Assembly (NCBI GenBank): GCA_904063045.1
Contig: CAJFCJ010000024.1
Location: 620,001 to 684,000 of the forward strand
DNA: 64,000 bases
Direction of reading: 5' to 3'
DNA from: Dimorphilus gyrociliatus
Lineage: Eukaryota > Animalia > Annelida
Positions 25,701 through 63,702 of the stretch are shown here, in pieces (position 1 is the stretch's first letter; the number at the start of each line of letters is the position of its first letter). Below the pieces are notes generated by a model, which saw nothing but the letters and a program-made list of their open reading frames with translations, was not told the origin of the DNA and made no database searches. The translations under genes and the position numbers were made by a program.

Positions 25701-27231
25701 AATCTGCATATTCATTAATGATTGTTAGTACTAGAATATCAGGGTATTTCTTAACTTTTTCTGGATAAGTTATTCTAAGGGATTTACTTAATATTTTTAG
25801 TAAAAATAAACAATTTTAATAGTTTCTTGTATTTTTTTTTTGACAGTACTACATGTCAGCAATAAAGAAGCTTTAACAACTATTTGTTCTATTCACAATC
25901 AGAGAGATTGTGCCTTCTATTGCAACAGCTGTAAGACGTCCGCCTGTTCACTTTGTGTTCTTTTAGAGCATAGCGAACATCGCGTAGTAAAATTACTGGA
26001 GGCATTGGATCAGAGTAGAGATATTTTAAGGTCTAGACTAGACATGCTGACCCATCATTTATCTAATTTACGTCACCGCCTAGAACAATTCACTCAAAAA
26101 AAAGTAGATGGAGGAACTGGGAAGGAGGGTAGGGATTTAGTAGAGAAAGCTGAACGTTTATCCAACTTGTCTGCTACTGTTCTCGAATTAGCGCAATCGC
26201 AAAAGATTTTAACTCTGTACGAAGACCTATCGTCCAGGATAAAATCCGTTATCGATATAGAAATACATCAACTTCGAATGGCTTTGGATAGTTCAGTCAC
26301 TCCTGGTTCAGAGCAACCAAGTCCAGAGCCAAACATGAAAACTGAGCACGAACAATTAAAAAGAACTCATACTGGAAACGCCCTTTATAAACCGGAAGTA
26401 ATCTGGAGAATGGAAAAGCTCAGAACTGATTCATCCGATTTATTCAATCCTTGCGACGTTGCTTGGTATGAGAATAGGCTGATTATAGTGGATTATGATA
26501 CGGCATCGAATAGCAAGTTAAGAGTCTTCGACGTGGCGGCTAGAAAAGAATTAGGGATATTAGGAACGTCCGATGTTAAGCCTTTAGGCGTTTGCGTCAC
26601 CAGAGATGGCAATATAGCTGTAACTGATAGTAAAGAGAAAAAAGTAAAAATTCTCTCTTCCGAGGGATTACTCATTGACTCTTGGGGAAAAGGCCATTTT
26701 GGATGGCCTTATGGTATTACTGTAGATTCCAGAGGGCATTTCATAGTATCTGATGCATTTAGTGATACTGTCGGCATCTATTCTAGTGACGGAAAGCTCA
26801 AAGTTAGCGTCGGGAATAAAAATATAACCTTAAGAAATCCTTATCATGTGACTGTTGATAAAAACGATAATGTTGTAGTTTGTGACAGTGGAAATAATTG
26901 TGTAAAAGTATTCGATATAAGTTCTGGTCGTCTTATGGCATCGATGAGACGAACAATTTCTTCATCAGCTGGTCCTAGAAAGAGTACAAAATTAAGATCT
27001 CCTAAAGGTGTTTGTACGGATCATAGGGCTGGTCATATCCTGGTTGCTGACGAATTTAGTAGAGTATGCATGTTTGATACTCAATTCGAATATGTGAGAA
27101 ACTTATTAACTGAACAAGATCATATAAAATTCCCAGAAGCTCTAGATATTAACAAATATGGACAATTGGCAGTTACTGAATGGAGCCCATCAAATATGTG
27201 TGCTTTAACCGTATTTTCGATATATGCATAA
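20837..27231 (+). CDS. TRIM-NHL E3 ligase (RING, B-box1, B-box2, coiled coil, NHL repeats; TRIM2/3/71-like), 675 aa
   Basis: Exons 20837-21093, 24428-24813, 25847-27231 (2028 nt). RING split by intron 1: CLMC..CDHIICEGC..CPVC. B-box1 CDVC..FYCTKCAVHLCDVC..H..H. B-box2 CSIH..FYCNSC..ACSLC..EHSEH. NHL repeats PLGVCVTRDGNIAVTD, PYGITVDSRGHFIVSD, PYHVTVDKNDNVVVCD. Confidence 0.88.
21639..21675. repeat. (CAA)n microsatellite in TRIM intron 1
   Basis: About 12 tandem CAA units. Confidence 0.95.
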
Positions 27232-39924: not shown

Positions 39925-41322
39925 ATGTTAAAGACAATCTTAAAGTCAAATGAACATTTGAATCGGAGTACTCCAACGATATTCGAAGATCCGGAGGAAG
40001 AAAAATTGCAATCGATCAATCTATCAAGACAATCTCAAAGGAGTGTAATATCTATTAATGTACCTCAACAGTATGAGAATTCCAAAAAAAATTCAAGTGA
40101 AGATTTATCCGACGAGAGACTGCTATCAAGACAATCTAGAAGAAGTACATCATCCAGTCGAACATTAAATACACCACCCTTGAAAAAATTAGATAAACAT
40201 AGAAATAATAACAATAAAAATAAGAAAAAGATGAAACGAAAAGACAATTTTGGTTTATCACCAGCCGAGGAGGAAGCGCTTCGCACCAAAGAATTTTGGG
40301 AGCATTGGGGTGCTGAAATGACAATAAAAATTCTTAGAAAGAGGCAAATTGAATTGGATAAAGAGGAAGAAAATTATCCTCAAATCTCTGGTAGAATTTA
40401 TCCAGAACCTCGAATTCCCAGAAGAGATTCAACCGAGTCGTTAGTAACCAATTTATCTCTATTCTCTACTTCAGACGCTACTACTGTGGAAGCAGATACA
40501 CCAGATGTCAAATTGAAGACAACAATGAAGAGAAGAAGGAAACCAAAGACTATTAAGCCAACAATAGTCAAGGAAGCAAAAGTAGATTGGGAAAAATTAG
40601 CTAGAGAAAAGAATAATAGCATTTTAAATAAATTAATGGGAGGTAAGAAAGAGGATCATCTTTCAAATGAAGAATGGGAACTTCTTATAAGCTGTTCTAA
40701 GAGAAAAGGTTTAATCGGTAGAGAAAAGAGTAAGTCTACAGCAAATGTTTTATCGACCATAGAGGATAGCGACGAAATGGTCGAATGGCAGATGGAGAGT
40801 TTTAAAGACTATAGCGATGAATTTAAGTTACCAGAGACTAGACCTTTATCCGTAGAGTTAGGAAGTGTAAACTCCAGCATCCAGCGTGATCTGGACGCTC
40901 AGCGTGCCCATCTATCGACAGCTCCCGCAAGAACCTCTAATTTCTCTTTTGAAGATCCCGAACATCGTAAAAAAATTAGGCAAAGACTATCGAAAACTAT
41001 TAACTCCTTATCAAAAATTACTGGACTCGGAGATAATAAAAATGTTTGTAGACAAAATCCAGAGGAAATTGGTAGATATACTGCAGAAGACTACTCCAAA
41101 ATATGTCGCTACCCCCAAAGATTAAAAGTCGCTCCTCAACTTGCCCAAGTAGTTAAATATGATATTATAAAGAGAATGGGTACACCCAAACTCCATAGAC
41201 TCTCAATCAGTGATATTAAGAACCTAAACGACGCAAACCCAGTTTTAGGTAGAATTCATAGAAATTTATTGGTATTCAATTGGTTGAATGATATTGACGG
41301 AAATTACGATATTTGCCAATAA
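39925..41322 (+). CDS. Uncharacterised intronless charged protein, 465 aa
   Basis: Long ORF. Mostly low-complexity and charged, with an ordered-looking C-terminal segment (PKLHRLSISDI..IHRNLLVFNWLNDID). No family recognised. Confidence 0.75.
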   Translation: MLKTILKSNEHLNRSTPTIFEDPEEEKLQSINLSRQSQRSVISINVPQQYENSKKNSSEDLSDERLLSRQSRRSTSSSRTLNTPPLKKLDKHRNNNNKNKKKMKRKDNFGLSPAEEEALRTKEFWEHWGAEMTIKILRKRQIELDKEEENYPQISGRIYPEPRIPRRDSTESLVTNLSLFSTSDATTVEADTPDVKLKTTMKRRRKPKTIKPTIVKEAKVDWEKLAREKNNSILNKLMGGKKEDHLSNEEWELLISCSKRKGLIGREKSKSTANVLSTIEDSDEMVEWQMESFKDYSDEFKLPETRPLSVELGSVNSSIQRDLDAQRAHLSTAPARTSNFSFEDPEHRKKIRQRLSKTINSLSKITGLGDNKNVCRQNPEEIGRYTAEDYSKICRYPQRLKVAPQLAQVVKYDIIKRMGTPKLHRLSISDIKNLNDANPVLGRIHRNLLVFNWLNDIDGNYDICQ

Positions 41323-42393: not shown

Positions 42394-44055
42394 ATGATTC
42401 CAGTTTTAATTGGCTTATCTGCATTTTTCATTTTCTTTCTCGTATTTTTGCAAGTAAATTCAACAAAGAAAGCTTGTAACTTTGATAAAAAATCAATGAA
42501 AACCGTATGTACAATTAAAGGATTATTAAGCATCCCTGAAGATATATCAAAGCAATCCGTGTCTTTACACATGGGTAGTAAACTCGATAAGTTTGAAAAT
42601 CATTTAAGCGTCTTAAAGAGATCAAATCTTTCTAATTTACACTTACTTATCGAACTAAAATTGGTTAAATGTGGTATAGAAGATATAGAACCAAATACTT
42701 TCTTAGATTTACAAAATCTGAAAAGATTAGATTTGAGCTATAATCGGATTGTTAGTATCAATGAGCACATTTTTAAAGGTTTACAAACAATGGAATATAT
42801 AATATTATCCAATAATCCGTTGACTGTCGTTGGTAATAATGTTTTCAGTGCTATGAATGTTGGAGAAATAATTTTCGGAAATAATCCTGCTCTAACTCAT
42901 ATTTCTAAGGAAGCCTTTAAAGATTCATCAATTGGAAAATTAGTTATAAACCGTGCTAATTTATTTTCAGTGGAAAACGATTCATTCCTACCAATAAGAA
43001 GCAGCCTTAATGAATTAGATATAACTAATAATTTACAAAATTTGCAATTGCCTTTTAATATATTTGATGGCCTTCACCTTAAAAGACTGTCTTTGGTCAA
43101 CAATGGTCTTAAAAATCCTTTCTATTTTTTAAAAAAGGCTAGTACAGAGATCTTAATATTGGATGATAATCCTTTGGAAGATTTCGACCTTTCAGACGTC
43201 GAAAGCGTAAAATCTATTGTTGTTCTTAGTATGAATAATTGTCACTTAAAGACGATTTGCGAAAAGAATTTAAAGAATCTCAACAATTTACAAGAAATTT
43301 ATATGGATTCTAACCGCTTGAAAACTTTAAATTTGACTATATTTGCTACACTAAAAAAGCTAAACAAAATCGATATGTCTAATAATGAAATCGAAGTTTT
43401 ACATCCAACGATTTTATCGGTATTAAAATCAATAGAGACTCTAGAATTGGATGGAAATCAAATTCGTAGAATTCCTGAAACGTTTCAGCCTTTGTTCGAG
43501 AGTTTAAAGTCAATCACTTTGCACGCAAATCCTCTTCATTGCAATTGTGAATTGCGTTGGTTTGTAAAATGGCTGGAAAATTTTGGAGATAAAGTGGAAC
43601 ATCTGGAAAAGATACAATGTTCTACCCCCATTCAAAAAAACATAACTCTAATCTCAAACTATGGCTTTCAATGTAGGCCTCCTACAATTTTTAACGCAAC
43701 TATAGGAAGTGATAGCTTAACATTGGTTTGTATGGCTGACGGTGATCCTCCTCCTGAAATTATCTGGACTGTTTTACCTGAAGGAGTAACCCTATTAGTA
43801 ACGAATAGTCCATTTTCTAGAAGTAATTTCATGGTCAAAAGTGTTCTTACTATCACCAAACATGGAAATTATACTTGTAGCGCTAAGAACATGGTCGGTA
43901 GTGATCAAGTTATTGTCGATACGCGAAATATTCCACTTTCGGGTTTAAAATTTGAAGTAGAATCTCGGGAAATAGATATATTAGAGACACCTCAAGGTTT
44001 TATATTTACTGCCGTGTTAATATTTATACTTGGGTATATTTTTAAGTATTACTAA
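42394..44055 (+). CDS. LRR-Ig (LIG-family-like) cell-surface protein, intronless, 553 aa
   Basis: N-terminal hydrophobic signal; LRRNT C..C; multiple LxxLxLxxNxL repeats; LRRCT NPLHCNCELRWF..C..C; Ig domain LTLVCMADGDPPPEIIW..GNYTCSAKNMVG; C-terminal hydrophobic segment FIFTAVLIFILGYIF followed by only KYY*. Confidence 0.9.
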   Translation: MIPVLIGLSAFFIFFLVFLQVNSTKKACNFDKKSMKTVCTIKGLLSIPEDISKQSVSLHMGSKLDKFENHLSVLKRSNLSNLHLLIELKLVKCGIEDIEPNTFLDLQNLKRLDLSYNRIVSINEHIFKGLQTMEYIILSNNPLTVVGNNVFSAMNVGEIIFGNNPALTHISKEAFKDSSIGKLVINRANLFSVENDSFLPIRSSLNELDITNNLQNLQLPFNIFDGLHLKRLSLVNNGLKNPFYFLKKASTEILILDDNPLEDFDLSDVESVKSIVVLSMNNCHLKTICEKNLKNLNNLQEIYMDSNRLKTLNLTIFATLKKLNKIDMSNNEIEVLHPTILSVLKSIETLELDGNQIRRIPETFQPLFESLKSITLHANPLHCNCELRWFVKWLENFGDKVEHLEKIQCSTPIQKNITLISNYGFQCRPPTIFNATIGSDSLTLVCMADGDPPPEIIWTVLPEGVTLLVTNSPFSRSNFMVKSVLTITKHGNYTCSAKNMVGSDQVIVDTRNIPLSGLKFEVESREIDILETPQGFIFTAVLIFILGYIFKYY

Positions 44056-51346: not shown

Positions 51347-52741
51347 ATGAGGAGCTTGGAGCTTTTTCAAATTACTGCTATTTCAATTATCGTATTGGGT
51401 TTTATTATTTTAGGTCAATCTAAATCCATACAAAAAATCATTCCAGTTCAAACTATGGATGATGCAGCCACTTTTTTAACAAAGTTTGGTTTTATGGAAG
51501 AGCAGGATGGGTATATTCCAACAGATAAAGTTACAGATGCTATTGAACAATATCAAGAGTTCTACGGGTTGGCTAAGACTGGACAACTAGATACAAAAAC
51601 CCTCAGTGATATGAATAAAGTACGTTGCGGATTTCCAGATGTGCAACAGAAGAAAAGACGGCAAAAGCGCTTTGTTATCTCGTCATACAGTTGGACGGCT
51701 CCAATTATTACTTGGAATTTCTTGAACTATACTGAAGACTTAACGATAGAGGAACAAGTTGAGGCATTTGAATATGCATTTGAACAATGGAGCTTGCCGA
51801 GCAAACTTGTTTTCGTAAGGGTGCATTCTTCTCCAGATATTCTCATATACTTTACAGATATAGATGGCGAGAATGGCATACTGGGTACCGCCGAACTACC
51901 AATTTTTCCAAACCACAACGTCACCATTAGATTTGACGAAGGAGAGAAATGGAGTACTGCAGATGATAAAACTCATTTATCGATAGTGGCTGCTCACGAG
52001 ATAGGCCATACTTTAGGTTTACTTCATTCGAAAGTACCTGATGCTATGATGTTTGCACAGTACAGCTTCAAGGGTCCAAATTATAAATTACATGTCGATG
52101 ATATTTTAGCTATTAAGGAATTGTATGACACTAAAGAAACTTGTATTTCGGGCGATGGAATTGTAATATTAAAGGACGGCAATCGAGTCAATGTAAGCAA
52201 TTTAAAAATTGGCGATGTTATACAGACATCTGAAGAAACGTACAGTCCTGTTTTAACAATGCTAGATAAAAATGATAAGACTCCTACACTGTTTATTCGC
52301 ATTGAAACAAGCCTTGGAAATTCTTTGAAATTAACACCTAAACACTTAATTGCCGTTCAATCAAATATACTTGAAAAAGAATTTGTGTTTGCTGAAAAAC
52401 TTCAAAATGGTTCAAAAGTATATGTTCATATTGACGGAAAAGAGGTTGAAGATGAAATTGTACATGTTGAAAAAACGGTAGAAAAAGGCTATTATGCTCC
52501 TCTGACGAATGAAGGAACTCTCATAGTCAATGGTATCGAGATATCGTGCTACGCTTTAATTGAAGATCAAGAATTAGCTCATCTATCGATGACACCTTTA
52601 AGATGGTTTCTACAAATATACGAAATGATATTTAGTGAGAGTTTCGACGAAAATCCAACAGATGGCATTCACTGGTATGGTCGCTGGTCTTACAATTATT
52701 TATTACCCATTGTTGATAAAATTGGGTTAATAAGCTTATAG
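51347..52741 (+). CDS. Matrixin (M10 MMP)-Hog (Hint + SRR) fusion protein A, intronless, 464 aa
   Basis: First ATG at 51347. Signal peptide; prodomain with cysteine switch VRCGFPD; furin site RRQKR; HEIGHTLGLLH; Met-turn AMMFAQY. Then T|CISG Hint start (Cys codon 52142), MLDKN, LTPKH, GYYAPLTNEGTLIVNGIEISCYA, SRR-like ELAHLSMTPLRW and GIHWY. Confidence 0.93.
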   Translation: MRSLELFQITAISIIVLGFIILGQSKSIQKIIPVQTMDDAATFLTKFGFMEEQDGYIPTDKVTDAIEQYQEFYGLAKTGQLDTKTLSDMNKVRCGFPDVQQKKRRQKRFVISSYSWTAPIITWNFLNYTEDLTIEEQVEAFEYAFEQWSLPSKLVFVRVHSSPDILIYFTDIDGENGILGTAELPIFPNHNVTIRFDEGEKWSTADDKTHLSIVAAHEIGHTLGLLHSKVPDAMMFAQYSFKGPNYKLHVDDILAIKELYDTKETCISGDGIVILKDGNRVNVSNLKIGDVIQTSEETYSPVLTMLDKNDKTPTLFIRIETSLGNSLKLTPKHLIAVQSNILEKEFVFAEKLQNGSKVYVHIDGKEVEDEIVHVEKTVEKGYYAPLTNEGTLIVNGIEISCYALIEDQELAHLSMTPLRWFLQIYEMIFSESFDENPTDGIHWYGRWSYNYLLPIVDKIGLISL

Positions 52742-53184
52742 AATTGTATATTTTATTGTAAAGATATTTTATTTTCGTACTCTTTTAAACATAGCCTTAG
52801 ATGAAAAAAACTATTTTTTCTTTTAAATAAACTTTTAACTCTAATCATAAATAACACTTTCTGCTTTACCAGTTTATTAGGACAAAATCAGAATAGCATA
52901 TACATGTAAACATCAGTATGTACGACAAGTATCGAGAGCAGTATAGTCTATATATCGAGTAATTACTCAAGACCTTGTTTTTTATATTCTATACAACTAT
53001 CTACAAATGTCATTCTATCTCTAAAGAGAGGGGAGACTGATTAAATTGTGCTGAATTTTGAAAGGTAACCATAGTTTCCTTTTCATATTCATTTTTAAAA
53101 ACATAAGATAAAAATTAATCTTCTGAATGTATTGTATTATCACTTTTTTCTATTGTAGAGGGTTGAAGACTCATTTAGGAAGCT

Positions 53185-54558
53185 ATGCTAAAGCTACTTT
53201 TGATTATCAATCTTTTTCTATTTGACATAGTTAACAGTGCCCCTGTATACACACCTATAGAAAATAGAGCTCAAGCGGTAAAGTATTTAGTAAAATATGG
53301 TTATTTATCGTCTGTGGAAGCCGGTAACAATATGAATGACCTTCAACGTGCTGTTGAATCATTTCAAATAGAATTTGGACTGAATATTACGAAAATGCTA
53401 GATTCGCCAACAATAACAGCTATGGCTAAACCTAGATGCAAAATGAGTAATATTAATATGACAATGTCCATGGGAAAGCCAGATATGATGTATAAGCTTC
53501 ACGATCCTGCAGCAAATATGAAGATTTTCACTTGGACAATTGTAACATTTTTAGACAAATTACCTAGAGACCTTCAATACGAAGCAGTCGAGAAGGGTTT
53601 ACAAAAATGGGCTGATAAATGTGACCTGGTGTTTCATAGGGTTGATGTTGAGAATGCTCACATAAGAATTCACTTTGAATATATTGATAGCCCTGGCTCA
53701 ACATTAGCCTTTGCTTTTTACCCAGGTTATACTAATAGTGGAAAACAAATTTATGATAGTTCAGAATCATGGACTATGGATAATGCTGGACACTCTTTAC
53801 AGTACGTTGTTACTCATGAAACTGGCCATACTCTTGGCATAATGCACTCGTCAGATCCTTTAGCTATCATGTATCCCTCATATAACTATTTGGGAGGAGA
53901 CTATAGCATAACTCCAGACGATGAAAGTGCCTGTAAAATATTATTTGGTGAGAAAAAAGATAACGGTTGTTTTGGACCAAACGGGAAGGTTTTACTCAGA
54001 GATGGTGGTACTGTTCTCATGAAAGATTTACGGATAGGAGACGTTGTGCAAACGTCTGCAAATGCATTTAGTCGCGTCGTCACTCTGCTTGATCGCAATG
54101 AAAAGTCTTTTGAAACATTTATAAGATTAAGAACACAAAGTGGAAACTTTATAGAATTGACAAAAAAACATCTAATTCCCATTAAGTCATCTGAGAATGA
54201 AGAAAAACGTTACGTTTTCGCTCAAAATGTCTTGTTAGGTAGCAAAGTTTACTCTGTTGTTGATGGAAAAGAAATTGAAGATGAAGTTATAGAGATAAGT
54301 TCAAAAACATATCAAGGCTATTATTCACCATTAACGTTTCATGGAACAATAGTTATTAATGGCATTCAGGCTTCCTGTTATGCAGAGGTGGAAAGTCAAT
54401 CAATATCTCATTGGTCAATGTTTCCATTGAGATCTTTATCCTATATTAAAAATATGCTATCCGTATCAAAAGTAGAAGATTTTGAAGGTATCCACTGGTA
54501 TGGAAGACTATCAAAGCAGTACGCATTACCAATAGCCAAGAACTTGGGTATTTTGTAA
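53185..54558 (+). CDS. Matrixin-Hog fusion protein B, intronless, 457 aa
   Basis: Signal peptide; PRCKMSN switch; HETGHTLGIMH; AIMYPSY. G|CFG Hint start (Cys codon 53968), LLDRN, LTKKH, GYYSPLTFHGTIVINGIQASCYA, SISHWSMFPLR, GIHWY. Confidence 0.93.
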   Translation: MLKLLLIINLFLFDIVNSAPVYTPIENRAQAVKYLVKYGYLSSVEAGNNMNDLQRAVESFQIEFGLNITKMLDSPTITAMAKPRCKMSNINMTMSMGKPDMMYKLHDPAANMKIFTWTIVTFLDKLPRDLQYEAVEKGLQKWADKCDLVFHRVDVENAHIRIHFEYIDSPGSTLAFAFYPGYTNSGKQIYDSSESWTMDNAGHSLQYVVTHETGHTLGIMHSSDPLAIMYPSYNYLGGDYSITPDDESACKILFGEKKDNGCFGPNGKVLLRDGGTVLMKDLRIGDVVQTSANAFSRVVTLLDRNEKSFETFIRLRTQSGNFIELTKKHLIPIKSSENEEKRYVFAQNVLLGSKVYSVVDGKEIEDEVIEISSKTYQGYYSPLTFHGTIVINGIQASCYAEVESQSISHWSMFPLRSLSYIKNMLSVSKVEDFEGIHWYGRLSKQYALPIAKNLGIL

Positions 54559-55945
54559 GGTTGATTCTTATTGCATTAAAATATTGAATATTCAATAAAA
54601 TTTAACCTTTCATAAGTTAAATAACTAAACATTTGTCAGTTTTTTTATTATAATCAATTTCTATTAGAAAAACTAGCTCAACGCCAAAAAGGAATAATGA
54701 ACTTTTCTTTACTGCTTTATCAGTTTTCGAAATGTATTTTTCCTACTTCCTAAACGATATTTAAGTGGCAGTAGCATTATTAAATTTACATATTCCTAGT
54801 TGCAAATACACTGCGAAATGTTAGATTAATTAGGTGGAATAATAGGAGTACGATTGAAAAAATTAGCAATCTTGTAAACTCGCATAATATGATCCTTTTA
54901 CGTTTTTTTAGTGTAATTAACTGTTTTTGGAATTACTTGATTGTTAAATTTTACAGATAAAAGATAAGAAGTTAAGTATCTTATTTATTATATTAATACA
55001 TAAGAAAATGAATCAATTCATTACCTTAAAATGGAAATTTCCCATATGAAAACTTAATTGGAGATTTTGTAATACTGGACTTACTGTATATTTAACAGAT
55101 ACAAGAATAAATGATTAAAGCAACGATCGAGAATTGAATATACTATATTTAAGATTTAATACGTAATGCCATAAGAGTCTGTACGATGGATGAGACAGTT
55201 TTTAGAAACGTAGCCCTAGAACTTACCATAAATATGTATTCAAATACATCATGTAAGTTTCAAAATGGTTTCTCTAGCTATTCGACATAAAATCCTATTC
55301 AATTTTATCATTCAAGAAAACTTATAAAAGATATATCTATTCGTTACATTCTGAATATTTTCTCTTTTAAGTAACAAAAATAACACAGAAGTGAAAATTG
55401 AACAGTATAGCAGAGAAACAATACATTATATTTCTTGAGTTGTTTAAATTTAAACGTGATTAAAAGCTACTGAAACGACTGAAATCATGACTTGCTTGAA
55501 CATAAATTATGCCTATTCAATTTCATATCCGGCTAAAATAAATCGTCATTTAACTGTGTATCAATTCGAATACATTTCATAATCGAATATTTTTAAGCGA
55601 AAGCAATATATCGATGAAGATCGAAAAAGCTTCATTTATGAAACATGAATGTTTTATCTACATGAATTTGATAATAAAAAAAACACAATTGTTTCTTTAA
55701 AATGTATCTACAGTTTAGTTTTATTCCGCTAGACTATTTAATTAGCTAATGAAAATTAAACAGAAAGAATTAAACACAAGTAGCAGATTTAAAACATTAA
55801 TATATGACTAAGCTAAAAAAAATTCAGTAAATTGCCAATCACTTCTTAAAGAGTGAAAAATTGTTTATGGCAAAAAAATATATTAAAATATTCAGGTATA
55901 AAATTGTCTTTTTACCACGTATTTCATTAAAATGGCTAATAAGTT

Positions 55946-57397
55946 CTAAGTTGATAGCTGAAAACCGAGGTTTTGTGCCAATGGTAGAATATAATTTTGT
56001 GACATTTCACCATACCAATGAATTCCTTCAGAGGAATCTATGCTAGACTTCAATCCAATTATTGAGTTATATAATTGCAATACCCATCTAAGTGGAGCCA
56101 TGGCCAAGTGTGCAATTTCATGACTATTGATTACGGCGTAGCATGATGCTTCAATCCCATTTACTATCACTGTTCCATCAGCTGTCATTGGAGCATAAAA
56201 CCCATTCATTTGTATTTCTTCAATAGATATCACCTCGGTCACTTTTTCAATTCCATTATCTTGAGAATATAACTTTTGTCCTATTCTTACTTGATCAGCA
56301 TGAATATAGCGTTTACCATCAGCAGTTTCAACAGCGATCAGATGTTGGTGTGTAAGTTGAATAAAATGCCCACTTTTTGTACGTAAAGTAAGAAATAGTG
56401 CTGGTTCTTGTGTATTTCTATCAAGCATAGTAAGAACTGGACTGAAACGACCTTTAGAAGAGAGAACAGAATCACCAAGTTTTAATTGCTTCATTGAAAT
56501 CGTCTGTCCATTTTCAAGTACAACTTTACTTTCACCAGAAAAACATGATTTTCCATAGAGCTTTTGAATACCTTTTTTGTCATCTGAATTCAGTTTATAA
56601 TTCTGTCCCTTATAAGAATAGTACGGATACATAATTGCCTGACTCTTACTGGAATGCTTCAAACCCAAAGCATGTCCGAGTTCATGACAAGCAACTACCG
56701 ACAGATGTATCTTATTATTTGACGTACTCCATTTTTCAGCTTCGTCGAAATGGATTTGACCCTTTCTTGAGGTTTTTGGATAGAAAGCATGGGCTAAAGT
56801 TCCAGATGGTCCATCCATGGGATAACCATCTCCATGTGCACCACTAACAAATCTAAATTTCAAATGGACATTTCCAGAATAAACTCTTGTAAACTTCAAT
56901 TTGCTATTGTCAGACCACTGTTTTAGTGCATATTTTATTGCAGCAACCACTGAAACATTTGGTATATCAGGTGTATAGTTATACAACCTCCATTTAAGCT
57001 TCTTCCTATTCCATTTTTTACCATATAATGCATAACGCTTTTGTCTGCCAGTATTCGGAGCTCTAAATTCATCGTCAACTATCCCGCATCGTTCTTTATT
57101 CATTAGTGACAAAGTTCTTGCATCAAGTTTACCAGTAACGGGTATTGCGGCTTCCTTTTGAAATCTTTTCAGACCCTCAGCATAATCATCTGTTTGATTG
57201 TGTGTAGTCTTGGACATATGCTCATACTTTTGCAAATATGATCTTGCTTCACGCTCACTTTTAACTGCAAGGATACGAGTAGATGAGTCTCGTTTCTCTC
57301 TTAATTTAGATTGAACCAAATTATTTTCTTCCAGATTCTCCTTAATTGCAGCAGACATTACAGCCGTAATAAAGCATAAAAGAATTAATGCCTTCAT
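55946..57397 (-). CDS. Matrixin-Hog fusion protein C, intronless, 483 aa
   Basis: Signal peptide; REKR and RQKR furin sites; ERCGIVD switch; HGDGYPMDG..LAHAFYP..IHFDEAEKW; HELGHALGLKH; AIMYPYY. S|CFS Hint start (Cys codon 56545-56543), MLDRN, LTHQH, GFYAPMTADGTVIVNGIEASCYA, EIAHLAMAPLRW, GIHWY. Confidence 0.93.
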   Translation of the reverse strand: MKALILLCFITAVMSAAIKENLEENNLVQSKLREKRDSSTRILAVKSEREARSYLQKYEHMSKTTHNQTDDYAEGLKRFQKEAAIPVTGKLDARTLSLMNKERCGIVDDEFRAPNTGRQKRYALYGKKWNRKKLKWRLYNYTPDIPNVSVVAAIKYALKQWSDNSKLKFTRVYSGNVHLKFRFVSGAHGDGYPMDGPSGTLAHAFYPKTSRKGQIHFDEAEKWSTSNNKIHLSVVACHELGHALGLKHSSKSQAIMYPYYSYKGQNYKLNSDDKKGIQKLYGKSCFSGESKVVLENGQTISMKQLKLGDSVLSSKGRFSPVLTMLDRNTQEPALFLTLRTKSGHFIQLTHQHLIAVETADGKRYIHADQVRIGQKLYSQDNGIEKVTEVISIEEIQMNGFYAPMTADGTVIVNGIEASCYAVINSHEIAHLAMAPLRWVLQLYNSIIGLKSSIDSSEGIHWYGEMSQNYILPLAQNLGFQLST

Positions 57398-60188: not shown

Positions 60189-61482
60189 CTAAATATATGC
60201 TAATAAAATGGACAAAATGATGACAATCTTTCCTATTTTCATTTCGGAAGCATCATTGCAGATTTTCTGTCCTCCATCTGTAAGAAAATGATATTTTGCA
60301 TTTAGTTTATCAATATCTTTGTCTTTAAATAATTAGACTGAAGATAGGAAACTATACCGCAATATCCGCACAATGCTTTACAATTTGACTTCATAAAGTC
60401 AATTATTGTCGGATTTTTGCATACCGACTTTGGATAACCAGGACTTTTACCGCACTTTGAATGATTATCCTTACAATCCTCTGTTAAATAAAGAAATATT
60501 AAGTATTTCTCAATACATGCTTCGGAAAACTTTATATTTACCGGAACAATCACCTCCAGTCCAGCCAGTAGAACACTTACATTTACAATTCGATGAATTT
60601 AGTGTACCACAATTTTTACACTTGAGAGGACAAGCTAGAAAGGCGAGATTAATCAATGGAATCTTTGTGTGCTTATTAATAATTGATTATGTACTGTAAT
60701 ACTTACTACAATCACCGGAAGCAGAACTGCAAGAATCTGCAAAATGGTTTTAATGGATTTTATTATTCTAAATAAACCATAAATAATCAACTCATATTAC
60801 CGCATAAACCATCTCGACACCATCCAGAGCCTGATGAACAGAGTGAACATGCATCACCTTTCTTAAAAGGTTTTTGCCCTTTGAAATTTCCCCTAAAGAG
60901 AAAATTTAAATAAATTCAACTAAGAATTATCACCAAAAAGAAAACTAACGGTGGAGAATAATTGCAGACAATATAGTGTACATTATTTTTAACTTTTCCA
61001 TTATCCTCGGTTAACTTGGAACAGTATTTATAACCGCAACCAAGACGATTAGTGTCTGCCCAAACAACTTGGGTGTAATGACCGCAAACTTTACTACACG
61101 ATAGCTTATTGTAATTGTAATCTTTTTTCTCATTATACCAAGCCTTAACAACTGCCTCCATATCAGTATATTGTCCCGAACCGCCAGAAATGAACAAATT
61201 TTGACCAGCACTGCCATCAACACCTTCAGTCTTGTCGAATCCATGTTCGAAATGACATTTTTCGGCCCATTTAGAAGCCTGATTAGCCAAAGGTCCATTC
61301 CAAGACATAATTTTCATGTCAGCTGCTCCTTCCTGTCTTCTTAATTTATTATGAACATCAAGAATCGCTTTTTCAAGTGAACCAGATAAAACTTCACAAA
61401 AAACTTTTCCATAAAAGCCTAAAATTAGAAAAGTAAGGAAGTGCAATATGAGAAGACTTAATTTATCTTTAAATACAATCAT
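60189..61482 (-). CDS. CAP/SCP (CRISP/PI16/GLIPR-like) protein with hinge, EGF-like and ShK domains and a hydrophobic C-tail, 319 aa
   Basis: Exons 61482-60950, 60892-60801, 60736-60707, 60634-60542, 60480-60358, 60277-60189 (960 nt). CAP motifs HNKLRR, GQNLF, WYNE, CGHYTQVVW, VCNYSPPGN. EGF CPLKCKNCG..CKCKCSTGWTGGDC. ShK CKDNHSKC..C..NCKALCGYC. Ends IVIILSILLAYI*. Confidence 0.88.
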
Positions 61483-62948: not shown

Positions 62949-63702
62949 GCAGCTGTCCACGAAATTGATTGGGTACTTGATTTAAATCATTTTTAAGCAA
63001 TAGCTCCCTATTTTTACTCCCATTTCTAATACATCTTTTCATTTGGGACAAGATGAATGGACTTGTGCGAAGGCATCATACCCCACCCCCACCAAGTGCT
63101 TTTCGATGGATGCAACTGTGAGGGTAATAGAAGATCGCCATATAAGAATAGGTCAATTAAATATAGGTGACCTAACTCAAGGAGTTAATGGGCAGTTTAC
63201 AATGATTCGGACAATGCGTCACAGTATTTGTTGAAAGAGATTGAAATTTATTAGCTTTCAAAAGACGGAGAAAATGTCGTTAACAGTAACGCTGAATCAG
63301 CCATATGCCGTTTTTAAAGATAATACTGAAGAGTGTATATGTGCCAAAAAGTATCATTTGGTTCAAGAATTTCAACAATTAATAGTAGAATAAGGTCAGA
63401 GGAAAAGGTCACGTGCATTGGGAAAGTATTGAAGAAGGGCATTTCGCTCCATTAACGATGGACGGCACCCTAGTGGTTAACGGTATTCAAAGGTCCTATT
63501 ACGCCGTTTATTAATAATCATAAAAAAGCCAGAATGTTCATCGCACAAGTTTAGATGAATTAACTATTTCTAAAGCGCCATCTTTAGCTCCTACAAGAAA
63601 CTAAATGTAAATCCTGACAATACACTTCGATATGGAAAGTTATCCTACGTTTACTTGAATTCAATGGCCACCCGGCTAGGACTCGCAAAGTCCATTTCTT
63701 AA
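62949..63702 (+). pseudogene. Decayed fourth matrixin-Hog gene
   Basis: Zinc motif remnant AAVHEIDWVLDLNHF* (62949-62996). Then LGQDEWTCAKASYP..TK|CFSMDATV..IGQLNIGD (Cys codon 63097); (G)HFAPLTMDGTLVVNGIQRSYYAV at about 63440-63510; tail YGKLSYVYLNSMATRLGL* aligning with the intact copies' tails. Several stops and frameshifts. The 5' part upstream of 62949 is too decayed to delimit. Confidence 0.85.

What the first reader, a model, noticed from the sequence alone, without database searches (positions are those of the whole stretch)
51347..57397. Array of MMP-Hog fusions: predicted self-cleaving, cholesterol-modified matrix metalloproteases
Seen: three intact ORFs, each reading signal peptide, MMP prodomain, HExxHxxGxxH catalytic domain with Met-turn, then a Hedgehog-type Hog module where hemopexin normally sits. 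Every copy keeps the N-terminal Cys, the (M/L)LD(R/K)N Asp, TxxH, G(Y/F)Y(A/S)P(L/M)T..GT..(V/I)NG..SCYA, and both SRR-like segments (e.g. AHLxMxPLRW in A and C; GIHWY in all three). Known: in Drosophila Hedgehog these correspond to C258, D303, T326/H329 and C400. They drive an N-S acyl shift, after which cholesterol bound by the SRR is esterified to the new C-terminus of the upstream domain. Inference: after furin and Hint processing, A and C would yield roughly 157-163 aa sterol-anchored proteases, a lipid-tethering route distinct from the TM or GPI anchors of MT-MMPs. Hog domains are known on Hedgehog, nematode Wrt/Grd/Qua and some other partners; I know of no description of an MMP partner but could not search.
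Basis: partly seen in the sequence, partly recalled or inferred. Interest (0 to 1): 0.96.

Follow-up and report, generated by a model that had tools for sequence, protein, structure and literature searches.

The report
Metalloproteases fused to Hedgehog self-cleaving domain
A tiny marine worm (Dimorphilus gyrociliatus) has three expressed genes in which a matrix metalloprotease is joined to the Hedgehog module that cuts itself off and attaches cholesterol, so these proteases may be the first lipid-tagged proteins of this kind outside the Hedgehog signals.

Summary
Three intact, single-exon genes (A 51347-52741 +, B 53185-54558 +, C 55946-57397 -) each encode signal peptide, MMP prodomain, Peptidase_M10 (E 1e-29 to 1e-55) and a Hedgehog-type Hint/Hog module (PF01079, E about 1e-47). 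The SRR also keeps the HPR and HWY motifs that papers show are needed for cholesterolysis. RNA contigs run colinearly through each gene, and one carries a spliced 5'UTR intron. The genome is the annelid Dimorphilus gyrociliatus (GCA_904063045.1).

An exhaustive search of 1.84 billion representative proteins found the architecture only in these genes and a few unnamed Logan proteins (P0123, P0275, P0006). Ten literature searches found no description. The earlier scan notes also flagged these genes, and another copy on other DNA of this genome.

MMP, Hint and SRR are under purifying selection (dN/dS 0.09-0.18).

Self-cleavage is very likely. Sterol attachment is a well-founded but untested inference. 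Verdict: a new variant of a known kind, and high interest.

The parts
51347..52741 (+). Gene A: MMP-Hog, 464 aa. Signal peptide; prodomain with Cys switch (C93, KVRCGFPD); furin site RQKR105-108; HEIGHTLGLLH at 217; Met-turn at 233. The S-loop and structural-zinc ligands are missing. Hog starts at C266 (-1 = Thr). D308, T330/H333, SCYA C401, SRR AHLSMTPLR at 411, GIHWY at 440.
   Evidence: RNA contig colinear over 51400-52790
53185..54558 (+). Gene B: MMP-Hog, 457 aa. Signal peptide; degenerate switch PRCKMSN (C84); no furin site; HETGHTLGIMH at 211. The S-loop and structural-zinc ligands are missing. Hog starts at C262 (-1 = Gly). D304, T326/H329, SCYA C398, SHWSMFPLR at 408, GIHWY at 435. 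Its MMP domain evolves fastest.
   Evidence: RNA contig 53157-54132 spans the MMP/Hog junction
53063..53156 (+). 94-nt GT..AG intron in the 5'UTR of gene B, spliced out in an RNA contig
   Evidence: joint 53062>53157 in run X6
55946..57397 (-). Gene C: MMP-Hog, 483 aa, the most canonical MMP (Peptidase_M10 E 9e-55; best PDB matches are matrilysin/MMP-7). Cys switch C103; furin RQKR118-121; intact S-loop; HELGHALGLKH at 238. Hog starts at C285 (-1 = Ser, only 3 residues after the ...LYG end of the catalytic domain). D327, T349/H352, SCYA C419, AHLAMAPLR at 429, GIHWY at 458.
   Evidence: RNA contig colinear over 55868-57397
63034..63508 (+). Decayed Hog-only remnant. It has an in-frame stop after ...MRHSIC, a frameshift between about 63351 and 63413, and SCYA changed to SYYA followed by stops. 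It has no SRR, and no MMP-like sequence is detectable upstream.

Best explanation
These are three paralogous, expressed genes of the annelid Dimorphilus gyrociliatus. Each encodes a secreted pro-matrix-metalloprotease whose usual C-terminal hemopexin domain is replaced by a complete Hedgehog-type Hog domain (Hint fold plus sterol-recognition region).

Proposed mechanism (inferred by homology): in the ER lumen the Hog Cys (C266/C262/C285) attacks the preceding peptide bond, helped by the TxxH Thr and His, and forms a thioester. [quoted passage not shown] This frees the Hog and leaves the pro-MMP esterified to the sterol at its last residue, 3-5 residues beyond the catalytic domain. For A and C, a furin-type convertase then removes the prodomain at RQKR. 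The result is a 157-163 aa catalytic domain held flat against the outer membrane leaflet, or carried on lipid particles.

Shown here: gene integrity, transcription of the fused frame, conservation of all catalytic and SRR motifs, purifying selection on all parts, and lineage restriction. Inferred: cleavage, the identity of the adduct, and protease activity (doubtful for A and B, which lack the structural-zinc site; B also lacks furin activation).
For: Intact ORFs and domains are shown. The residue-by-residue match to Drosophila Hh, including the SRR, is, with positions. H430/P435/R437, SCYA and the TxxH His are invariant across all six family members. The atlas model of C (pLDDT 0.78) has a Hog part that superposes on Shh/Ihh Hog domains at TM 0.87-0.88. 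RNA contigs are colinear through each gene with no internal joints, intergenic depth is zero, and a 5'UTR intron is spliced. dN/dS for P0275 vs P0123 is 0.18 for MMP, 0.09 for Hint and 0.15 for SRR, against 0.73 for the prodomain. Within-species differences in the Hog parts are 4 synonymous and 1 conservative. From the literature: HhN is a bystander replaceable by arbitrary proteins, and Asp303 is Hh-specific and needed for transesterification (PMC4695875). The HPR, HWY and SCYA motifs are required for cholesterolysis (PMC7906309; PMC7242414).
Against: There are no biochemical data. The -1 residue is Thr or Ser in A and C, where Hh has an almost invariant Gly, which could slow or alter the acyl shift. 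A and B lack all four structural-zinc ligands and B lacks furin activation, so their 'protease' product may be inactive or atypical. P0006, the most distant family member, has His in place of the Asp and lacks HWY, so sterol transfer is not uniformly conserved in the family. My AF2 model was too poor to examine the junction. Other Hog families (nematode Wrt/Grd/Qua) have never been shown to add cholesterol.
Confidence: 0.6

Rival explanations
1. The Hog domain self-cleaves but transfers no sterol. It acts as a release or maturation device through hydrolysis or another nucleophile, or as an ER quality-control and secretion tag. The MMP leaves the cell as an ordinary soluble minimal (matrilysin-like) protease.
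For: The N-S acyl shift residues are conserved. P0006 lacks the Asp and the HWY motif yet keeps the Cys, TxxH and SCYA. The adduct of non-Hh Hog proteins is unknown (Burglin 2008, PMC2362128, uses 'adduct recognition region'). The non-Gly -1 residues differ from Hh.
Against: A, B and C keep the Hh-specific Asp, which is dispensable for thioester formation but required for sterol transfer (PMC4695875). They also keep the HPR and HWY motifs needed specifically for cholesterolysis (PMC7906309, PMC7242414). The SRR is under purifying selection (dN/dS 0.15), which is hard to explain if no lipid is bound.
Confidence: 0.25
2. The Hog domain stays attached and serves as a non-catalytic C-terminal binding or regulatory domain, functionally replacing hemopexin, for example as a sterol or membrane sensor that positions or inhibits the protease.
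For: MMPs normally carry a C-terminal substrate- or partner-binding domain at this position. A and B have an unusual catalytic domain, which suggests neofunctionalisation.
Against: Every residue of the self-cleavage machinery is invariant across paralogues only 36-40% identical and across species. Hint is the most constrained part (dN/dS 0.09). Conservation of a catalytic Cys/Thr/His/Asp/Cys set is not expected for a mere binding module. The nearby pseudogene shows what decay looks like: SCYA becomes SYYA, the Asp is lost and stops appear.
Confidence: 0.08
3. Annotation or assembly artefact: two neighbouring genes (an MMP and a Hog gene) misjoined, or non-functional pseudogenes.
For: Many high-scoring database 'multi-domain MMPs' are tandem MMP-MMP proteins, which may be misjoined gene models. 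A decayed Hog fragment lies 6 kb away. A nonsense allele exists in an A-type gene of another organism.
Against: There are three independent uninterrupted ORFs with the same junction. The same architecture is found in independent assemblies from other samples (L001, L002, L003). RNA contigs span the junction, and selection is purifying.
Confidence: 0.02

Closest known systems
Hedgehog proteins (Hh/Shh; Hedge + Hog)
   Same: The C-terminal Hog module has the same catalytic Cys, Hh-specific Asp, TxxH, SCYA Cys and SRR HPR/HWY motifs. The Pfam Hint hit is E about 1e-47. phmmer gives E 4e-26 to Drosophila Hh over the whole Hog. The structural match is TM 0.87-0.88. The precursor logic is also shared: a secreted cargo followed by Hog.
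   Different: The cargo is a zinc endopeptidase zymogen (PG_binding_1 + Peptidase_M10) instead of the Hedge signalling domain. The -1 residue is Thr or Ser in two copies instead of Gly. There is no N-terminal CGPG palmitoylation motif.
Other non-Hedgehog Hog proteins (nematode Warthog/Groundhog/Quahog, Lophohog of Capitella and Lottia, cnidarian Hog genes, choanoflagellate Hoglet, fungal AIG1-Hint GIN1)
   Same: They follow the same evolutionary principle: a Hog domain captures a new secreted N-terminal cargo (PMC2362128; PMC9695228).
   Different: Those cargoes are small novel or Cys-rich domains (or a GTPase in fungi), and no protease partner is reported. Many of them have a divergent 'ARR', whereas the SRR here is distinctly Hh-like.
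Matrilysin (MMP-7) and membrane-type MMPs
   Same: The pro- and catalytic domains of C are most similar to minimal-domain MMPs (best PDB hits proMMP-7, 5ue2/2mzh, E 5e-51). A and C have the furin-type activation site that, from my own knowledge (not checked here), is typical of MT-MMPs. The predicted end result, a membrane-associated MMP, parallels MT-MMPs.
   Different: There is no hemopexin domain, TM helix or GPI signal. Anchoring would be by a C-terminal sterol ester. A and B lack the structural-zinc S-loop found in essentially all MMPs.

Membership tests
Matrix metalloproteinases (MEROPS M10A, Pfam PF00413) | Significant match to the Peptidase_M10 catalytic-domain profile | tested here: met
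   E 4.9e-31 (A), 6e-29 (B) and 9e-55 (C), covering profile positions 1-159. PDB hits to MMP-7/-3/-1/-9/-13.
Matrix metalloproteinases (MEROPS M10A, Pfam PF00413) | HExxHxxGxxH zinc-binding motif and Met-turn | tested here: met
   HEIGHTLGLLH/AMMF (A), HETGHTLGIMH/AIMY (B), HELGHALGLKH/AIMY (C).
Matrix metalloproteinases (MEROPS M10A, Pfam PF00413) | Prodomain with PRCGxPD cysteine switch | tested here: met
   A has KVRCGFPD and C has KERCGIVD. In B the Cys is kept but the motif is degenerate (KPRCKMSN). PG_binding_1 is present in all three.
Matrix metalloproteinases (MEROPS M10A, Pfam PF00413) | Structural zinc site (His, Asp, His, His of the S-loop) | tested here: inconclusive
   Met in C and P0006. 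Not met in A, B, P0275 and P0123: the loop with the first His and the Asp is deleted, and the other two His are Thr/Arg (A) or Phe/Tyr (B).
Hedgehog-type Hog domain (Pfam PF01079 Hint + SRR) | Significant match to the Hint module profile extending through the SRR | tested here: met
   E 2e-46, 1.5e-47 and 2.6e-47, profile positions about 10-205 of 213. The alignment to Drosophila Hh runs to residue 465 of 471.
Hedgehog-type Hog domain (Pfam PF01079 Hint + SRR) | Nucleophilic Cys at position 1, TxxH, the Hh-specific Asp and the second Cys (SCYA) | tested here: met
   All are present in A, B and C and aligned to C258, T326/H329, D303 and C400. In P0006 the Asp is His.
Hedgehog-type Hog domain (Pfam PF01079 Hint + SRR) | SRR helix-loop-helix with HPR and HWY motifs | tested here: met
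   H-x4-P-x-R is invariant in six of six family members. GIHWY is present in A, B and C (GVHWY in P0123) and absent in P0006. The motifs are defined in PMC7906309 and PMC7242414.
Hedgehog-type Hog domain (Pfam PF01079 Hint + SRR) | Autocleavage with covalent sterol transfer | not testable with these tools
   Needs protein chemistry (cleavage assays, mass spectrometry).
Bona fide Hedgehog ligand | N-terminal Hedge signalling domain (PF01085 HH_signal) | tested here: not met
   No HH_signal hit. The N-terminal part is PG_binding_1 + Peptidase_M10.

The most novel reading that the evidence does not exclude
These MMP-Hogs are the first natural enzymes, and the first proteins outside the Hedgehog ligands, to be covalently sterol-modified by a Hog domain. 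That would create a third, previously unknown way of tethering a matrix metalloprotease to membranes or lipid carriers. It would also show that Hedgehog-style cholesteroylation is a general cargo-lipidation device in animals rather than a peculiarity of one morphogen.
Probability: 0.5. Interest if true: 0.85.

Novelty: new variant of a known kind. Interest (0 to 1): 0.74.

Why it matters
Covalent cholesterol attachment is still described as singular to Hedgehog morphogens (PMC7242414). A naturally occurring protease cargo carrying a fully Hh-like Hog domain would turn that into a testable generalisation. It would also provide a natural example of what protein engineers already do with HhC fusions, and add a new membrane-anchoring mode to MMP biology. 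The three paralogues form a natural series for dissecting what the Hog tolerates and what the lipid does for a protease: canonical versus zinc-site-deleted MMP, furin versus no furin, and Gly, Ser or Thr at -1. The host has a compact genome (per the title of its genome paper, from memory) and, to my knowledge, can be cultured in the laboratory, so cDNA cloning and in situ expression look feasible.

Tried and rejected
1. AF2 prediction of C with the six-sequence family alignment gave pLDDT 49.9 and pTM 0.30. That is too poor for fold searches, so I used the atlas model's structural neighbours instead.

2. The word-index searches are lossy: gene B was not even recovered with its own alignment. 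The rarity claim therefore rests mainly on the exhaustive phmmer search plus the Pfam check of its top hits. A very divergent MMP-Hog scoring below about 154 bits would not have been listed.

3. I first guessed a placozoan, then a rotifer (the atlas neighbours are rotifer Hint families; an atlas query with a lineage-specific ORF was uninformative). I rejected both once the assembly accession identified the annelid.

4. The idea that the 269-aa and 181-aa members of P0123's cluster are domain-separating transcripts was rejected. The break is a CGA>TGA nonsense variant inside the MMP domain.

5. The 'fourth MMP-Hog pseudogene' at about 63 kb is only a Hog remnant. tblastn at E<=5 finds no MMP trace upstream.

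6. dN/dS between the window paralogues is unusable because dS is saturated.

7. I could not place the Hog domain phylogenetically relative to annelid Hh, Lophohog or other Hog families.

8. The identity of the organisms behind the Logan runs (SRR23372229/216/231, SRR31837527, SRR31984831) could not be established.
Full report
**Observation.** Pfam assigns each one PG_binding_1 (the MMP prodomain), Peptidase_M10 (E 4.9e-31, 6e-29, 9e-55) and the Hedgehog C-terminal 'Hint module' PF01079 (E 2e-46, 1.5e-47, 2.6e-47), covering profile positions about 10-205 of 213. tblastn of each protein on the window shows they are 36-40% identical to one another. They are therefore old paralogues in a 6-kb cluster, not recent or assembly duplicates.

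**Residue-level check of the Hog.** phmmer of the last 204 residues of C against PDB sequences hits full-length Drosophila Hedgehog (6td6_B, E 4.1e-26), human SHH (7e2i) and the Hh-C17 crystal construct (1at0, E 3.7e-17). In the printed alignment the first Cys lies on C258, LDRN on MDRN (D303), THQH on TPAH (T326/H329) and SCYA on SCYA (C400). The match continues through the sterol-recognition region (AHLAMAPLR on AHWGLAPMR, GIHWYG on GIHWYA).

A script located the same motifs in all three copies:
- A: C266, D308, T330/H333, C401, AHLSMTPLR at 411, GIHWY at 440.
- B: C262, D304, T326/H329, C398, SHWSMFPLR at 408, GIHWY at 435.
- C: C285, D327, T349/H352, C419, AHLAMAPLR at 429, GIHWY at 458.

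The ESM Atlas holds a model of C (pLDDT 0.78). Its residues 284-475 superpose on Shh/Ihh Hog domains at TM 0.87-0.88.

**Residue-level check of the MMP.** All three have a hydrophobic signal peptide, a Cys-switch cysteine, HExxHxxGxxH and a Met-turn. C is a canonical minimal MMP. Its best solved relatives are pro-matrilysin (MMP-7; 5ue2, 2mzh, E about 5e-51), and it keeps the S-loop (VSGAHGDGYPMDG...LAHAF). A and C have an RQKR furin-type site after the switch.

Three points were missed:
- Aligned to MMP-9, A lacks the loop carrying the first His and the Asp of the structural-zinc site. It has Thr and Arg at the other two His positions. B has the same deletion, with Phe and Tyr at those positions. 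Both have therefore lost all four structural-zinc ligands.
- B has no RX[KR]R site, and its switch is PRCKMSN.
- The residue preceding the Hog Cys is Thr (A), Gly (B) or Ser (C), where Hh has Gly.

In C the Cys follows the ...IQKLYG end of the catalytic domain by only three residues, so any adduct would sit directly on the catalytic domain.

**Are the fused frames real transcripts?** An RNA-seq metatranscriptome labelled 'coral metagenome' (X6) holds 83% of the sampled words of gene C and 55% of those of genes A and B. Laying its contigs on 51400-57397 gives one contig colinear with all of gene A (51400-52790) and one with all of gene C (55868-57397). A third joins 53020-53062 to 53157-54132, which removes a 94-nt GT..AG intron in B's 5'UTR and runs through the MMP/Hog junction. 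No joint lies inside any ORF, and intergenic depth is zero. A second run (X5, 2017, another organism label, zero mismatches) covers only the three genes at very high depth and looks like a transcriptome of the same species.

**Organism.** The exact-protein look-up places gene C on NCBI GCA_904063045.1, contig CAJFCJ010000024.1 (1,101,111 bp). PMC10212961 lists that accession as Dimorphilus gyrociliatus, a miniature marine annelid. To my knowledge it is common in marine aquaria, which would explain its presence in a coral sample. The window's other genes (TRIM-NHL, LRR-Ig, CAP, ShK) fit a metazoan.

**Distribution.** An exhaustive phmmer search with C against 1.84 billion representative proteins returned four entries that match across both domains: C itself, P0124 (identical to B), P0123 (451 aa) and P0006 (415 aa). 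Every other hit above about 230 bits proved to be a protein with two or three MMP domains (MMP-MMP) and no Hint domain. A Hog-region search added P0275 (480 aa), and a family-profile search added nothing more.

P0123, P0275 and P0006 come only from unnamed Logan assemblies. No named NCBI genome other than this one carries the architecture. P0123 and P0275 are A-type: they share the S-loop deletion and are 56-57% identical to A. P0006 is C-type with an intact S-loop. Its gene in L001 has a separate signal-plus-prodomain exon, and it carries His in place of the Asp and no HWY. The A-type and C-type genes both occur in runs of one study (SRR233722xx), so at least one other organism has both types. 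L001's neighbouring genes are absent from the D. gyrociliatus assembly.

In a maximum-likelihood tree of catalytic domains with 25 other MMPs, the six fusion proteins fall on one side of a single branch. Support is moderate (78/83, 76% of bootstrap trees). This is compatible with one fusion event but does not prove it. An earlier scan note reports a further MMP-Hog on another contig of this genome, which I could not check.

**Selection.** For the least saturated pair (P0275 vs P0123, dS 0.8-1.3), dN/dS is 0.73 in the signal peptide and prodomain, 0.18 in the catalytic domain, 0.09 in Hint and 0.15 in the SRR. Between the RNA contigs and the genome, the Hog parts differ at 4 synonymous sites and 1 conservative (V>I) site, while most replacements sit in the prodomains. 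The nearby remnant at 63034-63508 shows what an unconstrained copy looks like: an in-frame stop, a frameshift, the Asp lost, SCYA changed to SYYA, and no SRR.

[quoted passage not shown] It also says that the Hh-specific Asp303 is required for transesterification but not for the N-S acyl shift (PMC4695875). In human SHH, cholesterolysis needs an HPR motif (H374, P379, R381) followed by spaced leucines in SRR helix 1, an HWY hinge in helix 2, and the SCYA loop (PMC7906309; PMC7242414).

The MMP-Hogs have H-x4-P-x-R with the same spacing, and it is invariant in all six family members. They have hydrophobic residues at +1, +5 and +9 after the Arg, HWY in five of six members, and invariant SCYA.

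The best-supported reading is that the precursor self-cleaves in the secretory pathway and that the pro-MMP receives a sterol ester on its last residue. Furin then activates A and C. Cleavage is the safer inference (about 0.8), and sterol transfer less so (about 0.6). Non-Gly -1 residues, the zinc-site loss in A and B, and the Asp-to-His and HWY-less state of P0006 are the main cautions.

**Rivals.** Three rivals remain, in decreasing order of likelihood:
- Cleavage without a lipid.
- A non-cleaving C-terminal binding domain.
- An artefact, which the RNA data and the independent assemblies effectively exclude.

**Comparison and novelty.** The Hog passes every sequence-level membership test for the Hedgehog-type Hog. 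The proteins are not Hedgehogs, because they have no Hedge domain. The N-terminal half is an MMP by profile and by catalytic motifs, with the structural-zinc feature failing in A and B.

Hog domains are known to acquire new cargoes: Wart, Ground, Qua, Lophohog, cnidarian Hogs, Hoglet and fungal AIG1-Hint (PMC2362128). Burglin's survey mentions no protease. A 2022 annelid Hh study found no Hog genes other than hh in Platynereis and Pygospio. Full-text searches combining Hog/Hint/hedgehog with metalloprotease, matrix metalloproteinase or matrixin, or Dimorphilus with hedgehog or metalloproteinase, returned nothing relevant.

The proteins do exist as automatically annotated NCBI and UniRef records, so the architecture is presumably visible in InterPro. 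It appears undescribed. I class it as a new variant of a known kind, with high interest because it makes 'is cholesteroylation unique to Hedgehog?' directly testable.

Noticed in passing
window 63034-63508 (+): Hog-only pseudogene 6 kb from gene C. It has an in-frame stop, a frameshift, SCYA changed to SYYA and no SRR.
   Followed up: yes
L009:1160-1162 versus L003:1226-1228: The A-type MMP-Hog of another, unidentified organism is polymorphic for a CGA>TGA nonsense codon at R182, inside the MMP domain. The stop occurs on two different haplotype backgrounds in Logan runs.
   Followed up: partly
window 60302-61482 (-): A CAP/CRISP-family ORF (PF00188, E 1e-23) is followed downstream on the same strand by an ORF with a ShK domain (PF01549). 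They are probably two exons of one secreted CAP-ShK protein.
   Followed up: no
window 55000-55800: Low-depth transcript contigs lie between genes B and C, including a 119-nt GT..AG skip (55252>55372) in run X5. This is an unannotated small spliced transcript.
   Followed up: no
L001:823-2668: The C-type homologue P0006 has an intron between the Cys-switch exon and the MMP-Hog exon, a poly-Arg furin site (RRRRRRR), a 17-residue Cys-containing linker before the Hog Cys, His at the Asp position and no HWY. It may represent a mechanistically different (non-sterol?) branch of the family.
   Followed up: partly
window 25840-27231 (+), 42394-44055 (+), 39925-41322 (+): Single-exon TRIM-like B-box/NHL gene, an LRR-Ig gene and a disordered 465-aa ORF with FAM110-like atlas neighbours. 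This is ordinary metazoan context.
   Followed up: partly
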